64,000 bases of DNA from Botryllus schlosseri (lineage: Eukaryota), in contig CM119375.1 in the NCBI GenBank assembly GCA_051294905.1, forward strand, positions 3,844,001-3,908,000. Reading direction: 5' to 3'. Positions 1 to 19,160 of this stretch are shown here, in pieces. Each line of letters opens with the position of its first letter. Positions within the stretch are counted from its first letter, which is position 1. The notes under the pieces were generated by a model, which searched no databases, was not told where the DNA came from, and was given only the letters and a program-made list of their open reading frames with translations. The position numbers were made by a program, and so were the translations under genes.

Positions 1-1162
1 TTTCCTTTCTCCCCTATGTGTTCTGTGTGCTCTCTATTCAATCTCACCACCGAACTCTCAAGCTCACATTCAGCGATACCGGTCTCCGTATTCGGTTGTT
101 TTACAAATAAAACAGATTCCTTACTGGTATGTTTTGAATTGGTTTCAGATGCCGTGATATCGATTTCAGTGGGATCGACAATGTCCGAGGCCTCCAGGCC
201 ACCCGCATTCGATATCCATTGCTTGTATCCAAGAACTTGGTCAAATTCGAAAGACGTGATAGATTTCTCTCGATCCGTTGCCTTTGACGGATGACCTAGA
301 TCGATTTGCTGGTGTTCAGATGAATATGTGGAGGAGATCATGTCGTCAAATGTCGGAATGGATCCTTTGTCGATACGGTTTTCTGGGTTGGGGATTATTT
401 TGGACGATTTGCCTGAATCGGCATTGTCCTTCTCATGAGCAATCGAACGGACCCCACATATCTCCCCATAGTCGGGATCAGGTAAAGGGTAGGAAAATGA
501 CGGAAATGACGATAAGATACCCGTATCTGAACCTTCGCCATCACTTTTCCTTGACCAGGTAGATAGCTCATCATCGATGGAAATACTTCCGGCAAAAATA
601 TCGTATGCAGTAACATGAGCGAACATAAGTGGCGCCTGTTGAACGGGGGTCAACCTATGCAGAATATATTCTGGAAGCCTGAATGGTTTTTCAATACCGT
701 CCATTTCACACCAGCTAGCTCTTGACGCATAATCGTAACTCCTTGGTAATGACGCAGATCTGGTTACACTTTTCAAACTAGATCGTTCATTAGTTAAACT
801 ACGACCGTCGACGCTTGACGCGCGCCTTGTAAGCCTATGATTTGGACCTTTCGAAAGGCATGGATTCCCGGACAGAACTATACTTGCGTGGGATTGATAT
901 AACGTCCGCATCGCGGGTTTGTCTTCACGTGTCCTGGAGCGGCCTTGACGCTGCGTAAGACTAGTTGTTTTATCTTCGGGGGATATTCTAGATATCTTGC
1001 TGCTACTAGGTGTATCAACGTTATTATTTACTCTACAGCGCTCAATGCGTTCGCAGTCATTAGCAGATGTCGCTTTCGTTGTCGATTCCAACAGTTTGCG
1101 GTTTATACGCAGAGCTGGCCTTTTGCGCTGGCGGTTCGTGAACTGTGGATTACGTACCTGGC
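1..1162 (-). CDS. TTN: Titin unique-sequence exon running off the window edge
   Basis: Acceptor tttcatttacag| at 1162 in phase 1; hand translation has no stop to position 1 (GQVRNPQFTNRQRK..RRASSVDG..ECELESSVV..); absent from the ORF track because it has no stop. Confidence 0.82.
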
Positions 1163-1881
1163 CTGTAAATGAAAAAGCTTTATAAATCTCCCTGAATTCC
1201 GTGGCTGATATCTTTACCTCACTTAGTGCAGCAACATTCCACCGTGCGTCACTCAACAAACTCATGCACGGCATACTGCAAATGCGATGTTAGTTTTTAT
1301 ATTTAAAAAAAAACGACACACATACACACACATGTCATGTGCTGAACCCAAGCTGAAAACTTTGATCTTAAACGTCGTCCCTTTATACTTCCACGATTTC
1401 AGGCTCAAATTGTCGAAGGCACTCACGTAATAGACATTCCTTCTCTTTACACTTACAGAGCTACATTCAATTCCAAACATGTATTTTTTCCAATAAGTAG
1501 GATTCAAACGGTAGCCTACCGTCAACCAGAACTTTGTATGCCATGACAGGCTGTATGGCTTCATGGATTTATTAGGGATTAGGACAATAAAGTGTATGTA
1601 AAGTGTAATATACGGAAATATCAAAGACATAAAGTATAGGAGTAACAAGATGCAAAAAATTGTATGGATCGTTATTCAACCTCATGCTTTTTCAAAACGC
1701 GTGACAAAATGAGAGAAAATTCGTGCAGAACAATACAAAATATCGATATTTCGCGAACTTGATCGCAATCATACATAATATACAAATGAAAACGAAGCAA
1801 AACAATCAATGTAGTTGAACATTGACTTCACTCATGCAATGCAGTGTTGTGTCAAAAATACAAACATCGCTCACATCTCAC

Positions 1882-2905
1882 CTTCGCAAGGCAGTACCGT
1901 GACTTTGGAAGTGCTAGACGCGTCGCCGGCAATATTTAACGCAGAAAATGTATACACCCCCGAATCGGCCGCGGTGGGACTTTTAATTGTCATGGAGAAC
2001 ACATAACCGCTTTCGATGTCACCGCGATTTTGAAAGATATAATTGTCATTATCTTCGTGTATGAGATCCGCGTTTTTCAGCCACACGGGTTGCGGTTTGG
2101 GCCGGCCTGATACAGTGCACGAAAGGGTGAATTCATTGCCACTATCAACAGTCGCGATAGCTTTCGGGCGCTTTAAAATGCAAGGCGCTTCGTGCTTGCC
2201 AGATACCGACGACCGTCGACTTTCTATGGTATCATCCATCATGAATACGCCACTAGTGCTGGCGGTGGAGTGTGTTATCACACTGTCCGGGTATTCAGAG
2301 TCTACTACAAACGATCTGTTTTCATCTGAAAACCTGCTATCGGATGTAAGATTGTTGCGAATTGGCGAGGTAGATACAATGTTACTATCTAAAAAAGTAT
2401 CGCCATTTGCGTTACCTTCGTTACTAATAGACAGGCTTTCGGTACGGCGACCGCTAAAGGCATGAGTCCGGGATAAAAGGATGTTATTTAGTGAAGATGC
2501 ACGGAAATGAGCTCCAAAGTTTTCGGGTGATCCGTTAAAGGACGATTCAAACGATCGAGTGCGTATAGACTCGCTAGTCAAACTGTTAGCTCGACCATCA
2601 CGCCGTACGCGATCCAAGTACCGCCTTGTAGCTGAGGTAGGAGTTCTCGGGGTGTTAGTACCACTGCCTTTCTTTCTCGCCAGTCGACCGTCGCACTGTA
2701 ATCCATCCAAGTTTAACTTCGGTACTTTCGAATCGATGCTGCACTTGGCTATGTCCACTCTCGCAACGCACTGACATTGGCCTTCTTTGTTCTTCGCCAC
2801 GACTTTATATTCACCGGCGTCTTCAACCAGGCACGACTGTATCTCCATGATAGCGGTGTACGAGAACATGTCTCTCTCCGTGTTGATGAACACGCGAGGA
2901 CTCTT
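1882..2905 (-). CDS. TTN: Titin exon: Ig C-half, R/S-rich unique sequence, Ig
   Basis: ORF 1871..2893; DAGEYKVVAKN..; APCILKRP..CTVSGRPKPQPVWLKN..DSGVYTFSALN; donor G|GTGAGA, so the ORF stop is intronic; phase 0-1. Confidence 0.9.
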
Positions 2906-2934
2906 CTATAAAGAATAAAGTTTATTGTTATTGA

Positions 2935-3430
2935 TACTCATCATCATCATCATTGGTTTATTAGCAATTTTATCAGTTCAATACACCACAAAAATGCGAT
3001 ACAATGAAAAGACAGGAAGATGTCGAAGCGACAAGGAGTAGTCTATGGAATCTGACACCCACCTTGGCCTAGGCGATGTAAAGAGGAAGCATGCACATTG
3101 AATGAAAGTAAAGAAGATAGTATAGAAAAAGAATGCGACAAGAAATAGGGCGGCATGTCATGGGAAGCGAGATCGATAGGTCAGTCGTGGTCCTTTCCAA
3201 ATCACCTTAAGATTAGAATGAAAAGATAGGAATGCGTCGAAACGACTTGGAGTCTTATTTCAAACCAGACCAAAAATCAAATCAGACCAAATCACCCACC
3301 CGGGCCTATACGATGTAAAGAAGATGGATGCACACTGAATGAAAAGTAACAGAAGATAACATATACAAGACAAGTGATCAGGCAGCATGTGTTGAAAGGT
3401 GATGTAGATATCAGATCGTGTCCAGGTAAT
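2935..3430 (-). repeat. Possible retroposon 3' end with internal duplication
   Basis: On - it ends AATAAA..(ATG)n; the block CGATGTAAAGA..TGCAC..GAATGAAA is duplicated near 3074 and 3311. Confidence 0.35.
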
Positions 3431-3465
3431 CTCGGGCACTGACTAGTTATTCACATGATAATATT

Positions 3466-3665
3466 GGTCCATGGACATATGAGCAAGTGACACTTCAGCG
3501 CGCGACAATTAAGCAAGCGACATTTGAGCATGCGGACAAAATCTGCGGTTAGGGCCGGGTGTAGTATAGACTGAGGATTGGGTTAGGGTTCAGGTGGGGT
3601 TAGGATATACATAAGTGCCAAAGTGACGCATGCTAATGTGTCGCATGCTCATATATCGGGCAACC
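3466..3665. mobile_element. MULE-like MITE with GGTTA-rich core (copy 1)
   Basis: Imperfect 27-bp TIRs shared with 26926..27222 in opposite orientation; flanks gataatatt / gacaatatg look like a decayed 9-bp TSD. Confidence 0.7.
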
Positions 3666-6036: not shown

Positions 6037-6459
6037 ACTCCATTATGAATATTATTCAATTGTATATCGAGGTTCTGTACCCCCAAGATGTTCTCTAAAT
6101 TATTACTTTTTTCTAGTTTCTCAATAGAATATTATTCAACATGAACGCAATAGATTTTAGAATGTAACAGACTCATTACCGGAAGACATTGTATTTTAAG
6201 CAAAGATCCATTATTTCTACGCATTATTGTATATTCAATAATTTTACTGCATGTTGCTACTAGGTGCGCTTCTTTCAGGCAATGTATAAGTATACCTGAC
6301 ATGACTTTCAAGGTTGCCATAATCAACCTGAACAAGTGGACATCCATCTATTGCCACGCGATATTATGTATTCAATAATTATAATGTACGTTCCGATACG
6401 ATGCGCTTCGCTCATGCGATGTATGACTGACATCACTCCCCACACTGTCATAAGCAAAC

Positions 6460-6804
6460 CTCGTTTCTTATCGTAGTGCTGTGACTTCCTCACAGCAACA
6501 CTGGCACTGGAAACGCAAGTTCCACTCTCATTAACAGCTTTACACTCATAGACGCCCTCGTCGTTCACTGCTGATTTCTCAATCACCAGCCTGCTCGTTA
6601 GGACTCCGTTCTCGTATTGCGTACCAACAGAAAGTCCACCCTTTTGAGCGCGTAAAGGTTTGCCGTCTCGGCTCCACAGTATTTCCGCGAATGGTCGGCA
6701 TGAAACCTCGCACCTCAGTCGCAAAGGATGACCTTCGTCAACTTCAATCGGACTTAAAGGCGATACAAACTCTGGAGCGATTACATCCGTTTTCCCAATA
6801 ATCC
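6460..6804 (-). CDS. TTN: Titin exon: Ig domain after the giant exon
   Basis: APEFVSPLSPIEVDEGHPLRLRCEVSCRPFAEILWSRDG..DEGVYECKAVN; phase 1-1; donor position less certain. Confidence 0.85.
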
Positions 6805-7146
6805 CTAATAACAAAGATGTTATGACACTAAGAATAGATTGCTCTGTTGAACCGATAGCAGGCAATATATGCCAAAGACCTTGCTACGTTTCACACCGTA
6901 TTTAACGTCCACTTACAAATTACTATAACTTCGCACAGTTCGTTACATGACAAAAATAAGGTGTCAAAGCTACCACGGTATTAATAAGAATAGATTGTAC
7001 GATATATAGGACAGAAATCAGTCAAGGCTGGGACAAGTCCGAAAGAATGATTTGTCATATCTAATGATGTAAATTTTTGAAGTACCTTCCCCGCGAATTA
7101 CTTTCATGACGCCTAGATCTTATATTTAAACACCCTTTTCACTCAC

Positions 7147-10100
7147 TTTCTTTGGGATTATCATCGATTGTATTGATTTCAGTAACAGCATCAGTGGACG
7201 ACACCTCTGTTTGTGATTGTCGTCTAATAGTCGAAGGTTGCTTATTCGTGTCGAAAGAATCGCTTTTAGATTTCTGCTGTTCAATAACGACTGCGTCGAA
7301 TTTGCGGGTGCGCGGATTCCAAGTACGTTTTGTTGTCACAGTCTTCTCTTCTACAGACATCTTTGCCTTAGCGTCCACCAGCTCATTTCTCTTGGGAACA
7401 CCCATGCGACTATCAGAAGTATCTTCCGAGACGGCTGTTTGTTCCGGTGATGTCCCATGTAATTCTGACTCCAGCTTCCTCTCAGGCGCGATTTTCGTTT
7501 GAGATAGGGATACTGTCTTTTCAGATTGCTGATCTTCTTCTACGTGCTGTCGCTGTGCTTCCACTCCTATAGTTGGTTTGCTCGTGTCACTCGTTGACAT
7601 CTTACTAAGTGAGGATTCATCCGCAATCTCGTGTTCAGACTTTCGTAAAGGACTTTTTGGTTCTGTCTTCGGTATCTGTAAACTTTGTTGTAAATGAATA
7701 TTCTGTTGCTCGTCACGCGTGGATTTAAGTTTGAGGTCTTTGTCAACATTTTCATCCCCTGTAAGTCGTGTAATTTCGGATACAGATGATTTCGTAATTG
7801 ATTCAATGGAAACGAGTTCCTTACTTGGAATCGTGACTTCTATTTCATCGCTGGGAACCTCATCCGAGCTTTCCAAAACTTCAAATTGTATATTGCCAAC
7901 CAGAGACGGCTGATCATCAGAAGCCGGTGTTCCAGCTGTTTCATCTATATCAGTGTTTGGTCTATCTTGGTCACTTGCTTCGGTACTGCTTTTGAGAGCT
8001 GACGGTACATCGACAGATTCTTTCGTTAACTTTTGACTGTGCTTCATTTTACCATCGACAGGAGTGTCTTTAGATGGTGTTTCTTGTTTCGGCTGATCAG
8101 TCTCAATAACAACTTCTTCAAAACATCTTTTTCGGGGATTCCATTTACGCTTTGTCTTCGTAGTTTTGGGCTGTATTGAATCTTCAGAAATTCGAGATGA
8201 TTGCTTTTTCGGGAATCCATCTATTTCTTCAACAATTTCAGGAGCAGGTTCCGACCTTTCAGATGCTCTAAGAATGTCATCGTCAATGTTCTCACTGTCT
8301 ACTGGTTCTATATCACGTTTGTCGGTTACAGCCGATGCTGTCAGTGATATGCCTGGCTTCTCTTGATTTTGCGAAGTCTCTGTTAATATCTCTGTGACTT
8401 TCTCATCCAATGATGTCACATCAGTTACGTGCGACGGGCTGGGTGTTTCCAAATCAGCGCTGTCTTTTACCGTAACGACATCGCGGTGTTTTGAAGCACT
8501 GCGTCGCTTATCCTTTTCCGGCATGTTCACTTCAAGTTCTTCACTTATAAATTCGTCCAGGATTTCAAACTCAACTTTACCAATCAGTGCAGGACTTGAC
8601 GTATCTTGAATCCCGCCAATATCACCTTCGGAAGTGGTGTCAGGAAGAGCAGGATGTTGAGAGGAGATGTCATCTTTGCTATCAGGAACGTCACAATCTT
8701 TTGTCATTATAGGTTCATAAGTCTTCGTTCGCATAACGTCATCAGATTCATCTCGACTCGGAGACTTCTTGGTAGGAAGTTTATCCTTCGCCTGTTTGAG
8801 GGTTTGTTTTGGCTCAACTTCATCAACTGGAATTTCATCAAAACATCGTTTCTTTGCATTCCATTTTCTCGTCGTCTTCTTGTGAACAACAGGTTTATCT
8901 TCGACTGATTTTTCCTGTAAGGATGGTTTCATTTTAACAGTGCTATCATCGTCACCAGTGGACTTGGATGTTTCTATAATAGGAACGCCCGGTGTTTCTT
9001 GAGCAAGTTCTCTTGTCCGACTAGCAACCTCGCCACGAGTACCTTTTGCCATTTCAGCTACTTCACGAGTGCCCGCATCTGCGTGCACGGGGACTTGAGG
9101 TTTTTCATTTGCAGCCTTTGTAGCAGTTATGTCGGACAGCTCTTCTTTTTGGGATGTCTCTGACAATGCTTTAGTGACTTTCTCGTCCAACATCGTCAAA
9201 GCAGTTCCGTGTGTCTCTTTCTCCGCATCGAGCCGAGTTAGATCTGTCGTTGACGACCTGGGTGTTTTCAAATCAGCGCTATCTTTCGCCGTAGCAATAT
9301 TTTGATCGCCCGAAGTGCCTGTATGCCTTCCCTTTTGCGGCATAGTTACTTCCAGTTCTGCACTCGCAAATTCATCCAAGATTTCAAACTGAACATTGCC
9401 GATGGGAGGCTGGTCTTCATCTGGACTTGAAGTATCTGAACTGTGTCTATGATCGCGTCTAAAAGCATCAGGAACAGTTGTAATTTTAGATGTGATGTCC
9501 TCATTGCTATCACGAACATCACCATCCTCTTCATGTAAAATATTGAAAGTCTTTGGTTGTGCAACTTTATCAGATTCATTTCGACTAGGAGACTTCTTGG
9601 CAAGAAATTCATCCTTTGCCTGTTTCGGTGTAGCTTTAGGCTTAGCATCATCTACCGGAATTTCTTCGAAGCGGCGCTTCTTTGCATTCCATTTTCGCAT
9701 TGTCTTCTTCTGAACAACAGGTTTGTGCTCTGGCGTTTCTTCTGTTAAGGATCGAGTCTTTTTAATACCTGAACTCGACTGGGTTTCATCAAGACTTTGA
9801 GATTCGTGTGTCACTACCACAGTATCATTATCAGTACGGGTGCTGATTTGACGGAAACCGATGTTTCTATCTGCATTGGCTAATGCAGCATCAGCATCGA
9901 ATTGTGCAGGCACGACTCCGATAGCAGGTGTGATTGGAATCTCCTCTATTGCGTTCTCAAGGCTGGATATCGGACCTTCAGTATCACCAGTTTCATTCAG
10001 GTCCTCAGACATAAGCTGCACAATATTGGATGTGGATCCAATTTCGTTTCGTGGCTTCACGATTGCTTCTCGACTAACGGTAATCGGCTCAATTGCATCT

Positions 10101-13100
10101 TCAAGCCCAACTTTCGTAGTATGTACCGGTACAGTAGGTGATATTTTCATTTTATCATCAGCTTTACCATCTGCGTCAGGTCCGCGCGACCCTTGATCCG
10201 CATCGCGCCGGGTTTTATCCGTCATCGACGACTTGGGTGGTTTCAAATCAGCTGCTGTAACAATAGTTTGGTCGCTTGAAGCATGCGAAGGTTTTCCCTT
10301 TTGCGGCATAGTTACTTCAAGTTCGTCAATCACAAATTCATCCAGGATTTCAAATTGAACATTGCCGATCGGAGCCTGTTCTTCTTTGGGAGTTGATGTA
10401 TCTGGAACATGTTTGATATTGTCTTCTAAAGCTGCGGCAGGAACAGTTATATTTTTTGATGCAATGTCATCATTGTTATCAAGAACATCAACATCTTCTT
10501 CCTGTAACGGTTTGGAAGTCTTCGGTGGCATAACTTTATCGAGTTCATTTTGACTCGGAGTCTTCTTGGTAGGAAGTTTATCCTTCGCATGTTTAGATGT
10601 TGCTTTAGGCTTAACATCATCAACCGAAATTTCTTCGAAACAGCGCTTCTTTGCGTTCCATTTTCTCACCGTCGTCTTCTTAACTACAGATTTATGCTCG
10701 GACGATTCTTCTGTCAAGGATGTAGTATGTGTAATACCTGAACTCGAATGGACTTTGTCTATCTTTTGAGATTCGGGCGTCACTACCAAAGTATCATTAT
10801 CGGTGCTAGTGGCGATTTGTCGCAAACCGACGTTTTCATCTGCATTAGCTAATGCAGTATCAGCATCGAAATGCACAGGCACATCGCCGATAGCAGGCGT
10901 GATTGGCATCTCCTCAATTGCGTTTTCAAAGCTGGAAATTGGACCTTCAGTATCACCTGTTTCTTTCAAGTCCTCAGCCATAAGCTGCACAATCTTGGAT
11001 GTGGATCCAATTTTGTTTCGTGGCTTCATGATTGCTTCTCGACTAACGGTAATCGGCTCAATTGCATCTTCAAGCCCTGCTTTTGTAGTAGGTACCGAGA
11101 CAGTGAGTGATGTATCCATTTTGTCATCAAATTTTCCATCCACATCTGGTCCGCGCGTCCCTTGATCCGCATCGAGCCGAGTTGGATCCGTCATAGACGA
11201 CATAGATGTTTTTATATCAGCACTATCTTTGACTGTAACGACATTTTGGTTGTTTGCAGCGCGGGAATACGTTTTCTTTGGCGGCATAGTTACTTCCAGT
11301 TCTTCACTCACAAATTCATCCAGAATTTCAAACTGAACATTGCCAATCAGGGGTTGTTCTTCGTCTGGACTGGAAGTATCTGAAATATGTTTAAGATTGT
11401 CTTCAACAGCTGCGTCAGTAACAGTTTGAGTTTTAGGTGCGATGTCAAGAATATCACTGTCCGCTTTCTGTAGAGGTTTGGAAGTATTTGGTTGTGTAAC
11501 TTTGTCAGGTTCATCTTGACTAGGAGACTTCTTGGTTGGAAGTCCATCCTTCGCTTGTTTCGGTGTTGATTTAGGCTTAGCATCATCAACCGGAATTTCT
11601 TCGAAACAGCGCTTCTTTGCATTCCATTTTCTAACTGTCTTCTTCTGAACAGCAGGTTTACGCCCTGCCGATTCTTCTGTGAAAGACGTAGTCATTTCAA
11701 TAACTGAACTCGAATGGGCTTCGTCAACCTTTTGAGCATCGTTATCAGTGCGAGTTGTGATTGGTCGCAAACCCACGATTTCATCTGCAGTAGCTAATGC
11801 ACTATCAGCATCGAACTGTACAGGCGAACCTCCGATAACAGGAGTGATTGGAATCTCCTCAATTGCGTTTTTAAGGCTAGATATCTTGGGTTCAGTAGCT
11901 TCAGTATCTTTGAGGTCATCAGACATAATCTCCACCATCTTGGATGTGGATCCAACTGCGTCTCGCGGCTTCACGATTGCTTGTCGGTCAACGGTAATGG
12001 GTTCAATTGCATCTTCAAGTCCCACTTTTGTAATAGGTACAGAGACAGTAGGTGATACTTCCATTCTATCTTCAGGTTTTTCTTTGACATCAATCAACGT
12101 TGTCCTCGATGCAGTAGATTTGTGTTCGTCGGAAATTTTCGATTTGGAAGTCGAAACACGCTTCGATGTTTTGGTTCTAATCGATGTTTTCATAGTAACC
12201 GGTGTGACATCCTCGCCTGGTTTCTGATCTGATTCAACTTCACTTTTCGAGTCACTGGCAGCTTTACTGCGTATTTTTGCATCTGGTGTACGTTTCATTT
12301 GACTAGATTCTGGCTCGACGGGTACTTCTTCGAACATTTTCTTCGTGGGATTCCATTTTCGTTTCATCTTTATAACTGCTTTTGAATCACATTCCTGCCG
12401 GGTCAGGAGATTATCGACCTCCGCGACTTCCTTCAGGGCATCCGCAGCTTCTGGAACAATTTCTGATTTAGTAGCGTCAGATGAGTCCGAAGTACCTGGT
12501 AGAGTGTGCTCAGAGTCTAATTCCGATTTTGCATTCACTGGCAGGGCTGCCTTATCTGCGACCTGGGGCTTCTTACTAGGCAGTTTTCTGGATAGCGTTT
12601 TGTCGCTTACCTGCACAGTTGGCGGCACAATTGTCTCGACGGGGATTTCTTCAAACATCCTCTTCGCAGGATTCCATTTTCGTTTGGTTTTATTTGCAGG
12701 AATATCATCTACTTTCGTATCAGTGAAAAGTTTCTCAATATCAATATCAGATGGTCGCGAGGACGAGGTAGATGCTTCCACAGAAGGTTCCACAACTATT
12801 CGAGCACTGTCGACTGATGTTTCCCCGATAGCTTCTTTGGATTCAACGCTTGCACTAAGACGGGCGACTAGCTCCGATGTCAGTTCGGGTTTAGGGGCTG
12901 CTTTACGTGCATCTGTATTTTCAATCATGATGGGTATCACAGGCCAATCCGTGTCGTGACCATCAGGTATAGAATCAGGGACCTTTTCCAGTTCGAGAGT
13001 CGATTTTGCGTCATGTTTCTTCGGAATATCCTGCTGCTTCTCAACGGAGCGTTTCAGGCTATCATCAACATGTGTTGCGGTTTTCTGATCCACTTCGATG

Positions 13101-16100
13101 ATCTTCGTTTCATGTTGGTCTTTTCTGCTGATCAGCGGTGCATCTTTATCACCAACAGGTTCAGTTCCTTGTTTTTCCTGAAGACCCTGCCTCGTTTTGT
13201 CTTGATTGGTGCGTACAGTTATTGAGACTTCTTCGAATTTCCGCTTCACCGGGTTCCATTTTCTTTTGGTGGCAGGTTTCGTAGAATCTTCCTTCTCTTG
13301 TTTGCGCGCATCTGCATTGGATGACGGAGCCTTTGCGGCCTCAATGTTTTCCTGTATCTTGTCGGTTGATATATCAGCAGATGGGAATTTGTCCTCATCG
13401 TTCTCGATTACTCTCGACTTTGATGATACAAGCACGATTTTCTCTTCAACTTCATCTGAGCATGCAGATCCACTCGCTGGAGATTTAATTGGTGCAGGCA
13501 GGCTCTCTGATAGTCGTTGAATCAATCTATTTTTTATTCCTGGATTTGGTTGCCTTCGCCTGGTAAGTGTGTTTCCTACGTTGACAGGAGCTATTTCCTC
13601 GTCGATATCATGTACTGATACACTGATATCTGCAGTACCCTGCCGTTCCTTCGCTGGTATATCAGGTTTTGAATCCGGATTTAGCATCTTTTCAGATTCT
13701 ACAGTTTTGGACTGCATGATAGTCGACTCCTGTTTATCTTCCTGTATATTTTGCATGCCATCCACAGCAGATTTCGGCAAGGCAGTGCATGCAAAAGACG
13801 CATCCTTACTTTGTGTGCTTTCCTCTGTAACGCTCTCGATTGTTTTATCTTCTCTCGTTACCTGAGGTTTCTTATCGTCCTTTGATAATTTGGATCGAGG
13901 CTTTGGAGATGGTTTGTTATTAGAAGATTGGGTATCTTCAAGAACAATATCTTCAAAGCACTTTTTCGAAGGATTCCACCTCCTCTTCGTCTTTGATTTC
14001 GAATCCTTCGTCATAACATCCCCATCTCTTTTGGTTCTCTTAACCTCCTGGGATGCATTTTCGAACGAGATTTCAGTCGAAGATGCCAAAACAGTTGTTT
14101 GAGCAAGTTTGGCTGTAGCATCCTCCGATTTCAAGTAGATTTCCTTGTTAATCTGGTGCATTTTGCCAAGATCAGTTGGCACTGCCGCATCAGATTGGTG
14201 GGAAGGTGATTGCGCTGTTGGTGATTTGTCATCAATCCTTGACTGTTGGTAATCTGACCGGGAAGTCTGTGTTGACGAGGTTTCAGTATCATCCTTAGTT
14301 TGCACAAGCGACGTGGGTACCAGTTTTCTTTCGACCCCTGTTGGAGTGGTCTGCGTTTGTCCGACATCTGTCTGTAGTGTGAGCGAACCAATATTTACGG
14401 TATCGGTTTGAGTATATGTAGTGTCCCTTTTATTGTCAGCTTGGGATTGTGCAGGCTGTGCGGATGATTCAGTTTGAACACGTACCGAGTTATCTCCAGT
14501 AGACGGGGTCGCGGTTTGCGAATGTGTGGCGCCTGTTACAATTCTTGATTTCGTTTGCGCAGAGGTAGTCGTACGGGGTATAGATTCGGTTTGAGTTGTA
14601 AAAGATTCCCGACTTTGGAAGGTCTGAACTTGGGTATGCCGTGCAGGTTTCGCAGGTTCGTACGTCTGCGTTTCCCTGACAGCAAGGTCCAAATCATCGG
14701 ACTGTATCATTGTTGAATTCATCGCCACGGGTTCAGTTTGCACATTGAAATCGCTTCCGCTCTGTTCTGTTTGATTGGACGCAGATGAAGATGCAATTTT
14801 CTGAGTATCGGTTTGAGTGCTTTCTGTCGAGATTTCGTGCCTCGTTTGGGTGTCACTAGAGATCGATATATGCTTTTGAATGACATTCGAATCGCTGCTG
14901 CCGCGATCTTGCTTGGTTTCAGACGTCGGACGTGCACCATCGTACTCCAAATCATATGTTGTAGTATCTGGTCCGTACAGTAGCGATCTTCTATAAGTCG
15001 GCTGCGAAATGCCCGATAAAAAATCATCTGCTGATTCGTAAGAGACAGTAAGATCTTCTGGTACTGCAGTCTTGAGTTCAGCATGCCTATCTTTTCGAAG
15101 CTGAAATTGTAACACGACCGGCTCCGTAGCTACCGACTTACGATGCATTGCTAATTCGGTGACCGTTGGAGGAAAGACATCTGCATCTTCTACACTTGCG
15201 TCTTCCACGTCTTTAATTGGAGGTGGGCGATTAATTCCTGGTCGACTATCAAATACCAGAGAATACTTGCTGGTATCAGCTCCATAGAGAAGCGACCGTT
15301 TACGTTCTGTTTTCCTCATCGGCAAATCATTGAATTCATGAGCATACTCGATGGTTGTTTCAGATTCTTGTATTTCTTGAGCCCCCGTGACAACATCGGA
15401 ATGCCGATCGGTTCTGGTCGCAAACTTTTGCACCTTTGTATCATAAGCGATTGATTTTCGTGGTTTTGCGACAGCCCTGGGGATCTCCTCAAGTTCATGT
15501 ACTGTCTCTAGATCTGAATCAACTTTCGTTAGAGTTGCTTCCTTCATGTTGAGCGTCTGAATTGCGATCGTTTGACTAGCTCGCCAGGTTTGCGAATCTG
15601 CATCGGTGACATTGTCAGTTTGAGTTTCAAAGGTTTTCGTACGCAATACACTCGTCTGTTGCGACTGTACCAGGCTAATTTTTCTGGGCTCCGTTGTACT
15701 TGTGGAACGTCTTTGTGACGTCTGAACGGAAAAGATGTCTACGGATTTCTGATCGCGATCGATATGAGTTTGAGTCGAAACGTATCTGGTATCTGCTGGA
15801 ATTGTTTGAGTAACAGCAAATGATTCCAATTCTCCAGTCTGCGTTTCCATTTCTGATTCAGGCACATTTTCCCTTGCAGTGTTTACAGACACCGTGCTAC
15901 CGTAGCTGTCTGTTTGTGTGTCGACGCCTTTTTGTACAACTGAATCTGAGATTGTAAAAGAAGATTTCTTCTTAGCCAATGTCGTTTGAGTTATTCTGCT
16001 AAAATTCCTCTCTTGTGACGTTGTTTGGGTTTGCGCAAAGCTCCCAATAACAGTCTGCGTACTAGAACCATTATCAGCCCGGCTTGGTTTGCGAGTCTGT

Positions 16101-17712
16101 GTGCTTGTAACAGACTTGTTCATGGATTCAGTTTGAGTATCACCATGATATGTATCAGGTCCCTTAGTTTCCGTGCTGGCATCTGAGAGGATACGTGAAT
16201 CATGTGTGTCAGCACCATAAACATTCGTTATTGATCGCCTTGCTAACAGAGATTGGGTGTCAGCGCGACGAGACGGCCTTTCAGCCAGTGTCGTGATGTC
16301 TTTCAGTTCGCCTGTTACTAAATCAAGTGTCTGCGTGCCAGACACCGCCTTGCTATCTTTGGTTTGAGTATATCCGACTAGTGTTAACTTTTTGATAGTT
16401 TGAGACGAAGCCATGCTTTTCTGCATCTCAGTTTGTCCGAGAAAATCCGAACTGACCGGTGCTCCGGTTTGAGTGCTATAAGATGGAGTAGACGCTCCAA
16501 CTGATTTATCTTGTCGCATTTCCGTTTGTGTCTCTGTTGCCAGCTGCGTGTCTATGGTCTGTGTAGGACCAGTGACACGAACAGGAACACGTTGGGAACG
16601 GGTCTGCGTTGATACAACCCTATCCGAAGATTCGGTCTGAGATGCCCCGGAAACTTTACGGGCATGCCTTGTCTGTATTTCGGTACTTGATGTAAATTTG
16701 CGAGTCTGAGATTCAGTATCAGATTTGTCAGAAACTACCGCTCCAGGAGCCCGTGTACTACCTTCCGAAGTAGTGCGACTAACTGTCTCATTAGTACGGA
16801 CTGTCTTCATTGGATTTAGATTCTTAGGCGTGCTGAGAGTAATTGTACGCTCAGAGAAGGTCTGCTGCTTGCCGGGAAGTTGCAGATAAGCCTCGCTTCT
16901 TTTCTTTTCGTCCATCAGATTATCTTCTGAAATCTCTCCAAGGTCTATATCTTCCGTACGGTGCGATTCCGCTTCAGATATATAATGTGGCTTCCCGTCA
17001 ACTGATTCCCCTTCGGACATATAAGAGGACTTTTCCGCGACTGTCTCCAATTCACCCTGTCCGGCCAGTTTCACTACTACTTCTGGGTACTTTCTTTTGT
17101 TTTTCACGTCCATGGTATACATCGAAATTCCTGATCTTTTGGATTCGGGTTTCTCCTTCCGTCGGTAAAGTTCTATAAATTTTCTTTTCGGTTGCGTCGA
17201 AATACCTTCCACAAAGAGTGGCGATGCCACGCCGTCCTCTCTGTCACTCAGGTCACTTCCAAAGTCAAAACAAGAGTCCGTATCTGATGTCAGTGCAGGA
17301 GATATCAATTGATAGTCATCAGTTTCTGAGAAAGATACCTTTTTGCGAAGTCGCAATTCTGTAGATACCGATCTCTGTGTAGTTCTTGAAAATGGAGATA
17401 TTGGTGCCTTCTCACTTATGCTACGGATTTGTCGTTTCGGACTACTCTTTCTTTTGGGCATTATAAAGCGCATGTTAATACCGCTTTTGCCCGGGGAAGG
17501 TGGCCGCATGACCAATTCCTTACTCTTTTGCGACATTTGAATCGGAGTTACAGTTCGCGCTGGGCTGGTCGCTGGAGATTTAGACCTGACTAGTCTAGTA
17601 GTTACGTGGCTTAGATGTCGTCTTTCTTGCACGGATACTTCGCGTGAGTGCTGCGCCTCGATCGCGTCGTGCTTCGCCTGGCGTGGATCTACCTGATACG
17701 AAGGATCTTGGC
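7147..17712 (-). CDS. TTN: Giant 10,566-nt titin exon: about 3,520 aa disordered S/T/D/E/K-rich segment
   Basis: ORF 7139..17632 extends to acceptor ccgcag| at 17712 and ends at donor A|GTGAGT at 7147; length divisible by 3; phase 1-1; no Ig or Fn3 signature. Confidence 0.9.
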
Positions 17713-18366
17713 CTGCGGTGGTTGTGGTAAGTGGAAGGCGAATAAGGGAGATGAGAGGTGAAGCAAGGGTATGAAATGAAGTGAAAGTTGTGATGAAAGA
17801 GAAAATAAAGATAGTTAGAATTGAAAAGTAAAAATTAAAGATATTACGAGAGTGAGAAAGTTGGGAATACCTATAACGTTAAAACCCATACCCATGTCTA
17901 CCCATACTCAAAGTATGGCAAGAATCGATATGAAGTTACGTAGGAATCGTTGGGTGACGTTTTTACAATGCTGCAAATCACTCAAGTGTTCTTCTGGCGA
18001 TATCACTGTCAAGAATCGTTAATGTGAGCTAAATAAATATACGTACTCTCCAGATATTTTATGTATTCAACAGTGTCGCAGCTAAATGGCATTGGATAAA
18101 TCCAGCACTGTGGCCGCTGCTACTGTAAATACTATGGTATACGATGAAAGAAATGATCGATCACCAAAGAATAGAAACTTTTCAGGACTACAGTTGAATC
18201 ATGGAACACTGTACTGTCGAAATATATAATATATAATATGTGGATACTAGGCAGGTAAGGTAGACGTGAGCAGCGTCAAGAAGATTGTGTTGATCATAAA
18301 TATATAAACACATGATTGTGTGGATTATGATATATGATGGAATGATGTAAAGAAATCAATTTTCAC

Positions 18367-18679
18367 CTTCGACATTCAAAGAGGCCGAACAAGATACGCG
18401 GCCCAATTTATTCCAGGCTCGCACTTCGTACTGCCCTATATCACTATGTTTCACGTCAGTTATCACAATGCCACGGGTGTGACTGTGCATCTTCGTCCGG
18501 TAATAGAATTTGTATTTCGCCGAGCCCTGTTCCGGGCCGATCGGAGTCCCGTCCTTAAACCAAGCCACTTGCGGTTCCGGCATGGACGCCAGCCGAACTT
18601 GGAAATGCGCTTCCTCGCCTTCTTCCACAACGGTATTTTTACACGGTTCTGCTATCATGGGCGAGAATTCAGTCACCAC
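18367..18679 (-). CDS. TTN: Titin exon: Ig domain preceding the giant exon
   Basis: EFSPMIAEPCKNTVVEEGEEAHFQVRL..VAWFKDG..DIGQYEVRAWNKLGRVSCSASLNVE; phase 0-1. Confidence 0.9.
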
Positions 18680-18744
18680 CTGAACGTAATAGGATATATA
18701 TGAAAATACACTACCATGTAAGTCAGTTTTATCATTGTGTAAAT

Positions 18745-19160
18745 CAGGGGGTTCCAACCTTTTTTACACTGTGAGACTGAAAATTCTGACAAATCAATGC
18801 CCAACCCACCCTATATTTATCAACCTTTTGAGAAACTAAGAAACCTTATTTCAATTAAAAACGGGTTTATACAGTTACCGGTAGTTAGAATCATGAAATG
18901 ATATAAATCCAACACACAATACGCATGGTAGATTGCATATTTAGTTAATGCGATGATTGAGCTCGTTTTTTCTTTGGTTGCTGATCAATTGCTTAAGTCA
19001 GCTCAAGAGCAAGCAGTAGCCTATTGCCGTAAAGGTATATTCGTTGAATTTTTATTTATTTTTGTTGTTACAGCAAATTAGACTATGACAATTTTTCAAA
19101 GCCCGCCTGAAAAAGGCTCAGGGACCCTACGAGACGTGGACTCCAAGTTGGTAACTAATG
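18745..19160. mobile_element. Degenerate hAT-type MITE
   Basis: Left end CAGGGGGTTCCAACCTTTTT; decayed right end near 19140-19160. Confidence 0.4.

What the first reader, a model, noticed from the sequence alone, without database searches (positions are those of the whole stretch)
14260..16720. Very large TQT array: a candidate multivalent LC8 (DYNLL) scaffold built into titin
Seen: two clusters, about 16720-15550 with 16 literal TQT and about 14860-14260 with 7 TQT, plus about 18 S/V/I/A/L-QT variants (e.g. VVSTQT, ATETQT, KGVDTQT, KTFETQT, VRETQT, RVQTE), many spaced 10-25 residues apart in disordered sequence; QT is sparse in the rest of the exon. Established: TQT-anchored motifs bind the dimeric hub LC8, and tandem sites (ASCIZ/ATMIN, Nup159) zip two chains into a ladder-like duplex. 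Inference: up to about 40 sites, more than in the multivalent partners I know, could let LC8 pair and stiffen two titin chains, titrate their elasticity or act as an LC8 sink. I know of no such system in titin. An alternative reading is an ATM/ATR S/T-Q cluster; phosphorylation at these sites could also gate LC8 binding.
Basis: partly seen in the sequence, partly recalled or inferred. Interest (0 to 1): 0.88.

Follow-up and report, generated by a model that had tools for sequence, protein, structure and literature searches.

The report
Periodic TQT motif array in titin
A disordered 820-residue stretch of a giant, expressed exon in a titin-like muscle gene carries 43 evenly spaced Gln-Thr motifs (23 of them TQT), which look like docking sites for the dimeric hub protein LC8, but only about a dozen of them have LC8-compatible flanks and binding is untested.

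Summary
On the minus strand, window 14261-16723 encodes two clusters with 16 and 7 literal TQT and 43 xQT in all. Shuffling predicts about 2 TQT and 12 xQT. The 230 residues between the clusters have no QT, and the rest of the exon has 8.

The motifs are periodic: the commonest spacing is 11-12 residues. There is no DNA repeat, and the third codon positions of Q and T are fully scrambled. Selection therefore acts on the residues and their spacing.

The stretch lies in a 10,566-nt, phase 1-1 exon (7147-17712) flanked by I-set Ig exons whose best solved relatives are titin. Spliced RNA contigs from three studies include the exon. The region is predicted disordered and has no detectable homologue.

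The LC8 reading is plausible but overstated. The anchors, the disorder and a spacing equal to the ~4 nm LC8 dimer all fit. The flanks do not: they score no better than those of proven non-binders. Only 13 sites break no published rule, and 6-16 have positive or binder-range flank scores, not about 40.

An ATM/ATR S/T-Q cluster does not explain the invariant Thr after Gln. I put the LC8 scaffold at about 0.42. Novelty: new variant of a known kind.

The parts
7147..17712 (-). Giant symmetric exon of a titin-family gene: 10,566 nt, 3,522 codons, phase 1-1.
   Evidence: Open frame. Acceptor AG at 17714-17713, confirmed by the RNA joint 17711/12 to 18366/67 in contigs of three studies. Donor GTGAGT at 7146-7141, read from the sequence only. 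No Pfam domain.
15551..16723 (-). TQT cluster 1: 27 xQT sites, 16 of them TQT, in runs of 4-6 sites spaced 11-12 residues.
   Evidence: RNA contigs lie on most of it, though none of the pieces listed covers about 16453-16504.
14864..15550 (-). 230-aa spacer with no QT. It is more acidic and hydrophobic than the clusters and holds two copies of an R-[KR]-SLLYG-x-DT motif (15236-15304 and 14927-14995).
14261..14863 (-). TQT cluster 2: 16 xQT sites, 7 of them TQT.
   Evidence: One 2,746-nt RNA contig spans 13302-16047.
17713..18366 (-). Intron (GT..AG on the minus strand) between the upstream Ig exon and the giant exon.
   Evidence: Joint skipping 654 nt in runs X1, X3 and X4.
18367..18757 (-). 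Upstream I-set Ig exon. 18757 is only the limit of the ORF; the exon's 5' end was not mapped.
   Evidence: Pfam I-set, E 8e-18. Best solved relatives are titin tandem Ig, 3b43 and 6fwx, E about 1e-37.
6323..6865 (-). Downstream I-set Ig exon (ORF limits).
   Evidence: Pfam I-set, E 8e-17. Best solved relative is titin 3b43, E 1.5e-38.
7139..7146 (-). Splice donor GTGAGT overlapping an in-frame TGA stop. Splicing continues the protein; intron retention would end it.
   Evidence: Sequence only. The 3' junction was not checked in RNA.

Best explanation
The segment is an intrinsically disordered, Thr/Ser/Gln-rich part of an I-band 'unique sequence' exon of a titin-family protein. It carries a periodic array of xQT short linear motifs that selection keeps at the protein level.

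The most likely reader of these motifs is the dimeric hub LC8 (DYNLL). Each LC8 dimer would clamp the same motif on two parallel titin chains. Runs of sites 11-12 residues apart would then form close-packed stacks of ~4 nm beads. These stacks would hold two chains in register and pre-extended, removing that length from the entropic spring and stiffening it.

Realistically about 6-16 of the 43 sites are competent on their own. Weaker neighbours would be filled only through avidity, as in ASCIZ.

Shown here: the array, its periodicity, its expression, its predicted disorder and its titin context. Inferred: LC8 binding, chain pairing and any mechanical effect.
For: - QT excess and periodicity.
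- No DNA tandem repeat and no internal protein repeat.
- Third codon positions of Q and T are at maximal entropy, while QT survives in 43 of about 51 possible units.
- Of the 62 Gln in the clusters, 43 are followed by Thr. The residue before Gln is T, S, V or I in 36 of the 43 sites in the positional tally (37 in the anchor list), which is the LC8-permitted set.
- Glu/Asp are enriched at +2 and Ser/Glu at -2, as in known binders.
- 13 sites break no published rule.
- Flanks score higher than at composition-matched control positions (p = 0.004).
- Mean pLDDT is 34, there is no Cys, and 48-54% of residues are S/T/Q/N/G.
- The exon is spliced into RNA in three studies.
- LC8 beads are about 4 nm, and linkers of 1-3 residues are tolerated in ASCIZ.
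- Only 37% of PSSM-picked TQT peptides bound in the source study. At that rate it is still unlikely that none of 23 TQT binds.
Against: - Flank quality is poor. The mean flank score is -1.8, against +4.2 +/- 2.7 for the binder model and -0.4 for ITC-proven non-binders.
- Only 8 of 43 flanks fall within 1 SD of the binder mean.
- Val at -4 (7 sites) and Phe at -3 (5 sites) are enriched, although both are disfavoured for LC8.
- No orthologue was found, so anchor conservation is untested.
- My matrix is a simplified, binder-only stand-in for LC8Pred, with a background composition taken from memory.
- Saturating tens of sites on an abundant sarcomeric protein would need very high LC8 levels (inference).
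- The held literature contains no report of an LC8-titin link.
Confidence: 0.42

Rival explanations
1. The segment is a lineage-specific elastic or 'unique sequence' spring element. Its periodic QT motif serves some other purpose: an unidentified QT-reading partner, a transient beta-type self-association between strands or chains, or a modification site. LC8 is not the selected ligand.
For: - The unit's own preferences (Val at -4, Phe at -3, a basic residue about 6 positions before Gln) differ from the LC8 optimum.
- Flanks score no better than those of proven non-binders.
- AF2 gives a weak beta-hairpin (pLDDT 56-71) over three sites with hydrophobic flanks, 16295-16390.
- Invertebrate titins are known to carry lineage-specific tandem-repeat springs (established knowledge, from memory).
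Against: - I know of no other reader of Q-T in disordered chains.
- Pure entropic springs do not need one invariant dipeptide at a fixed pitch.
- No fold is predicted, there is no Cys, and only 15-20% of residues are hydrophobic.
Confidence: 0.35
2. The segment is an S/T-Q cluster domain whose Ser/Thr-Gln sites are phosphorylated by ATM, ATR or DNA-PK-type kinases. This could be its main function or a switch on partner binding.
For: There are 38 [ST]Q in 590 aa. That far exceeds the usual definition of at least 3 in 100 aa (from memory).
Against: - Thr after Gln is the most constant feature: 43 of 62 Gln are followed by Thr.
- 14 of 43 xQT sites lack Ser or Thr before Gln, and 9 of 38 [ST]Q are not followed by Thr.
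- The kinase consensus explains neither the +1 Thr nor the 11-12 pitch.
- Titin is sarcomeric, while these kinases are mainly nuclear (established knowledge).
- ASCIZ's 'SQ/TQ cluster' turned out to be its LC8-binding domain.
Confidence: 0.06
3. The pattern has no function. It is a decayed tandem repeat or a by-product of Thr/Gln-rich composition.
For: No homologue is available to show conservation. Everything in the unit apart from QT is nearly random.
Against: - Shuffles never reach the observed counts.
- Neutral decay would erase Q and T as fast as their neighbours. Yet QT survives in about 84% of unit positions while its synonymous sites are scrambled.
- TRF and self-BLAST find no repeat.
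- The allelic insertion seen in RNA is in frame.
Confidence: 0.05
4. The 11-12-residue T-x-T units fold into a beta-solenoid, like insect antifreeze proteins, giving a flat Thr array.
For: T-Q-T is a T-x-T motif at a 12-residue pitch, as in the Tenebrio antifreeze protein (from memory).
Against: AF2 predicts no fold: mean pLDDT is 34 and 786 of 820 residues score below 50. There are no cysteines and few hydrophobic residues. Unit lengths are irregular, ranging from 2 to 25.
Confidence: 0.03

Closest known systems
LC8-binding domain of ASCIZ/ATMIN
   Same: A disordered Ser/Thr/Gln-rich domain with many TQT-anchored motifs of mixed strength, arranged in two clusters with short and long linkers. 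Many of its sites are weak on their own.
   Different: - Human ASCIZ has 11 verified sites (16 predicted) and was called 'the most by far'. This array has 23 TQT and 43 xQT.
- All ten human ATMIN motifs in the source table have S, D or N at -4. Here only about half of the sites have S, T or D there.
- ASCIZ is a nuclear transcription factor with spacing mostly of 20-35 residues. This is a sarcomeric protein with an 11-12 pitch.
- There is no sequence homology.
Dynein-light-chain interacting domain of yeast Nup159
   Same: Tandem QT motifs that, with LC8/Dyn2, form a rigid, uniformly stacked rod of ~4 nm beads joining two chains. This is the structural outcome proposed here for the 11-12-spaced runs.
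   Different: Nup159 has five sites in a nucleoporin. Binding is proven there and untested here. I could not retrieve Nup159's own motif spacing.
Titin I-band unique sequences (N2B-us, Novex exons, PEVK)
   Same: - A long disordered insertion between I-band Ig exons.
- A phase-symmetric exon.
- An I-band position near a Novex-3-like exon, according to other readers' unchecked notes.
- N2B-us is a precedent for a titin spring that also docks partner proteins (established knowledge, from memory).
   Different: There is no sequence similarity to anything in the libraries. The composition is Thr/Ser/Gln-rich rather than Pro/Glu/Val/Lys-rich. Human titin is absent from the LC8Pred proteome hits.

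Membership tests
Multivalent LC8 (DYNLL) partner / IDP duplex scaffold | A TQT-type anchor ([TVIS]-Q-[TV]) at positions -1, 0 and +1. | tested here: met
   23 TQT plus 14 S/V/I-QT sites. Six sites have poor anchors (A, G, L, N or Q before Gln).
Multivalent LC8 (DYNLL) partner / IDP duplex scaffold | Flanks that fit the 8-residue motif: polar at -4, large or basic at -3, no aromatic at -2, D/E/P and not hydrophobic at +2, and no internal Pro. | tested here: inconclusive
   13 sites have no violation, 13 have one and 11 have two or three. The flank matrix gives a mean of -1.8, against +4.2 for binders and -0.4 for proven non-binders. 6-16 sites have positive or binder-range flank scores.
Multivalent LC8 (DYNLL) partner / IDP duplex scaffold | The motifs lie in an intrinsically disordered region. 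| tested here: met
   The AF2 single-sequence model has a mean pLDDT of 34, with 786 of 820 residues below 50. Composition is 48-54% S/T/Q/N/G with no Cys. Caveat: no alignment was available for the model.
Multivalent LC8 (DYNLL) partner / IDP duplex scaffold | Spacing lets neighbouring sites be occupied together, and the partner chains can lie parallel and in register. | tested here: met
   The commonest spacing of 11-12 residues leaves 1-4 linker residues. Linkers of 1 and 3 residues occur in ASCIZ. That titin chains run parallel in the sarcomere is established knowledge and was not tested.
Multivalent LC8 (DYNLL) partner / IDP duplex scaffold | Direct binding of LC8 dimers that depends on the QT anchors. 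| not testable with these tools
   This needs ITC, SEC-MALS or EM, or a multimer structure prediction. The structure tool takes one chain from the window only.
Multivalent LC8 (DYNLL) partner / IDP duplex scaffold | The anchors are conserved in orthologues more strongly than their flanks. | not testable with these tools
   No homologue was found among 1.84 billion representatives or in two word-index searches. Within-gene evidence points to selection on QT.
Titin/connectin family (I-band region) | Tandem I-set Ig exons of titin type on the same strand, spliced to the exon, with phase-1 symmetric exons. | tested here: met
   Seven minus-strand ORFs carry I-set domains. The two nearest hit titin tandem Ig structures at E about 1e-37 to 1e-38, ahead of Roundabout 1 (8e-16) for the upstream exon and contactin-2 (8e-22) for the downstream exon. 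The kinase and A-band parts lie outside the window and were not checked.
S/T-Q cluster domain (PIKK substrate) | A high density of [ST]Q, with selection acting on the S/T-Q dipeptide. | tested here: not met
   The density criterion is met (38 in 590 aa). However, the constant dipeptide is Q-T rather than [ST]-Q, and 14 of 43 sites lack S or T before Gln.
T-x-T beta-solenoid (antifreeze-like) repeat | Regular coils that fold into a stable beta-helix. | tested here: not met
   No fold is predicted. There is no Cys, and unit lengths are irregular.

The most novel reading that the evidence does not exclude
This is the largest LC8-binding array in any known protein. A dozen or more LC8 dimers would zip neighbouring titin chains into stiff, 4-nm-pitch ladders within the I-band. 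Passive muscle stiffness would then depend on LC8 level, on phosphorylation of the TQT threonines, and on inclusion of this skippable exon.
Probability: 0.25. Interest if true: 0.85.

Novelty: new variant of a known kind. Interest (0 to 1): 0.6.

Why it matters
If LC8 does bind, this would be the first link between the LC8 hub and the titin spring. It would suggest a new way to tune muscle elasticity: lateral cross-linking and pre-extension of a disordered spring by a small, regulated dimer. It would also raise the record for LC8 multivalency above ASCIZ. If LC8 does not bind, the array is still a clear case of a selected, periodic two-residue motif in a disordered protein, and its reader would then be unknown. 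Either way, the claim can be tested directly with short recombinant fragments.

Tried and rejected
- **Homologue searches.** All came back empty: Pfam on the exon, HMMER against 1.84 billion representatives with the 820 aa, two word-index searches covering residues 331-1150 and 1151-3521 of the exon, the PDB sequence search and the ESM Atlas (best score 0.70, uninformative). Conservation of the anchors therefore could not be tested.
- **Repeat searches.** TRF at the DNA level and self-BLAST at the protein level found no repeat. A recent duplication is rejected.
- **Beta-solenoid idea.** The AF2 model does not support it.
- **LC8Pred.** The real program could not be run because its matrices exist only in a figure. 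I used the paper's written rules and a binder-only matrix tallied by hand from its Table S4. My scores are not LC8Pred scores.
- **RNA reads.** Reads were laid on 12950-18900. The exon's 3' junction and any exon-skipped isoform remain unchecked. The list of allelic differences was cut off before the TQT region, so no polymorphism test was possible.
- **Papers not held.** The Nup159 spacing paper and the amphioxus connectin paper are not in the library.
- **Organism.** It stayed coded and I did not establish it.
Full report
**What is there**

The finding lies in a single minus-strand open frame, 7139-17878. RNA contigs from three independent studies carry a joint that skips 17712/13 to 18365/66, which reads GT..AG on the minus strand. 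This joint links an upstream exon to an acceptor AG at 17714-17713.

At the other end, a consensus donor GTGAGT sits at 7146-7141 and overlaps an in-frame TGA. The exon is therefore 7147-17712: 10,566 nt, with phase 1 at both ends. The 3' junction is read from the sequence only.

The two neighbouring exons, and five more minus-strand ORFs in the window, are I-set Ig domains. The two nearest ones hit titin tandem-Ig structures (3b43, 6fwx) at E about 1e-37 to 1e-38. The next families are far behind: Roundabout 1 at 8e-16 for the upstream exon and contactin-2 at 8e-22 for the downstream one. 'Built into titin' is thus supported at the level of the titin/connectin family. The giant exon itself has no Pfam domain.

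**The observation**

There are 16 TQT in 16720-15551 and 7 in 14860-14261, making 23 TQT and 43 xQT in 820 residues.
- Composition-preserving shuffles give a mean of 2.0 TQT (max 8) and 11.7 QT (max 26).
- The 230-residue spacer has no QT. The remaining 2,703 residues of the exon have 8, against 10.5 expected.
- The sites are periodic. 18 of 42 gaps are 11 or 12 residues and others are 22-25. The share of gaps of 10-13 residues beats random placement in both clusters.

**Selection, not repetition**

- TRF finds no DNA repeat and self-BLAST finds no protein repeat.
- With the 43 sites aligned on QT, the third codon positions of Gln and Thr are at maximal entropy (0.97 of 1 bit; 1.96 of 2 bits). 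All flanking positions are close to random.
- About 51 units of 11.5 residues fit in the two clusters, and 43 of them keep QT.
- Neutral decay of an old repeat would have erased Q and T as fast as their neighbours. The dipeptide and its pitch are therefore being kept at the protein level.
- Of the 62 Gln in the clusters, 43 are followed by Thr. The residue before Gln is T (23), S, V or I in 36 of the 43 sites in the tally (37 in the anchor list).

**Context**

- The clusters are 48-54% S/T/Q/N/G, 15-20% hydrophobic, and have no Cys.
- A single-sequence AF2 model has a mean pLDDT of 34, with 786 of 820 residues below 50. The only exception is a weak hairpin at 16295-16390.
- One RNA contig covers 13302-16047 without a break. 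Others lie on most of the stretch up to the acceptor, leaving unlisted gaps of 20-130 nt. No internal joint is seen, so the array is expressed.
- The contigs differ from the window by up to 3.3%, and one carries an in-frame 3-nt insertion. The species is very polymorphic.

**Does it look like LC8 sites?**

I took the published positional rules and the binder and non-binder tables from Jespersen et al. 2019 (PMC6607443).

- *Rules:* 8 TQT and 5 S/V/I-QT sites break no rule, 13 sites break one, and the rest break more or have a poor anchor.
- *Matrix:* I tallied a binder-only matrix from the 79 binders. It gives the four flank positions of the 43 sites a mean of -1.8.
  - This is higher than composition-matched control positions in the same clusters (-3.6; p = 0.004).
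  - It is far below the binder model (+4.2 +/- 2.7).
  - It is no better than 29 TQT-type peptides shown by ITC not to bind (-0.4).
- *Disfavoured residues:* Val at -4 and Phe at -3 are over-represented, although both are disfavoured for LC8.
- *Best candidates (coordinate of the Gln codon):* 14410, 14269, 16528, 15622, 16471, 14815, 15988, 14593, 15841, 14626, 16675, 16708 and 14740.

A fair count is 6-16 sites competent on their own, not about 40. Even so, the source study found that 37% of PSSM-picked TQT peptides bound. It is therefore unlikely that none of 23 TQT in a disordered chain binds.

**Geometry**

Eleven to twelve residues in an extended chain span about 3.7-4.1 nm. LC8 dimers appear in EM as beads about 4 nm across, and Nup159 forms uniform stacks of five (PMC5963919). 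In ASCIZ, linkers of 1 and 3 residues between motifs occur and give lateral contacts between LC8 dimers. Linkers of 6-9 residues give homogeneous complexes (PMC10046861). The pitch of this array is thus the closest packing LC8 allows. That match is the strongest indirect argument for LC8, but it is an inference.

**Mechanism proposed**

Parallel titin chains would be clamped in register by LC8 dimers at the better sites, with weaker neighbours filled through avidity. Bound stretches are held extended and paired. This removes them from the entropic spring and stiffens the I-band segment. Tension runs along each backbone, so it would not directly load the LC8 interface.

Exon skipping (phase 1-1), LC8 level and phosphorylation of the Thr residues are possible controls. 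All of this is inference.

One quantitative objection is that filling tens of sites on an abundant sarcomeric protein would need LC8 at very high concentration.

**Rivals**

- *Unknown reader or transient beta-type self-association.* This stays close behind LC8 because the flanks are not LC8-optimised.
- *ATM/ATR S/T-Q cluster.* It does not explain the invariant Thr after Gln, the 14 sites without S/T before Gln, or the pitch. ASCIZ's own 'SQ/TQ cluster' proved to be its LC8 domain.
- *Neutral decay or composition.* Rejected.
- *T-x-T beta-solenoid.* Not supported.

**Novelty**

- Nothing in the libraries resembles the segment.
- No held paper links LC8 to titin.
- Human titin is absent from the LC8Pred proteome list.
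- Human ASCIZ, with 11 verified sites, was described as having the most of any partner.

**Earlier notes of this scan**

Other first-stage notes had already marked the same exon as a symmetric cassette exon, and my RNA and sequence checks agree with that. They also listed the ten K/R-x-W-N motifs, which I confirmed by pattern. They place a Novex-3-like exon and an N2A element downstream, which I did not check. Another note reports a second TQT-rich disordered arm elsewhere in this genome, also unchecked.

Noticed in passing
window 14927-14995 and 15236-15304, minus strand: There are two copies of an R-[KR]-S-L-L-Y-G-x-D-T-x-x-Y-x-L-x-[FY]-D motif, 103 residues apart. They lie in the QT-free spacer between the two TQT clusters. 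I recognise no known motif in it.
   Followed up: no
window 7139-7146, minus strand: The exon's donor GTGAGT overlaps an in-frame TGA. An unspliced transcript would therefore end the protein two codons after the exon, giving a possible short-titin C-terminus. The 3' junction was not checked in RNA.
   Followed up: partly
window 7327-13984, minus strand: Ten [KR]-x-W-N-[PA]-x-x-[KR]-x-F-[ED] motifs fill the rest of the giant exon, in repeats of about 100-320 residues. I confirmed them by pattern search. Another first-stage note had already listed them.
   Followed up: partly
window 12950-18900: RNA contigs differ from the window by up to 3.3% (90 of 2,746 letters in one contig). One run carries an in-frame AGA insertion behind 15697. 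The species is very polymorphic, which would allow a population test of selection on the QT codons.
   Followed up: no
window 16295-16390, minus strand: This is the only part of the 820-aa model above pLDDT 50 (56-71). It is a beta-hairpin-like element covering three QT sites with hydrophobic flanks that score poorly as LC8 motifs.
   Followed up: no
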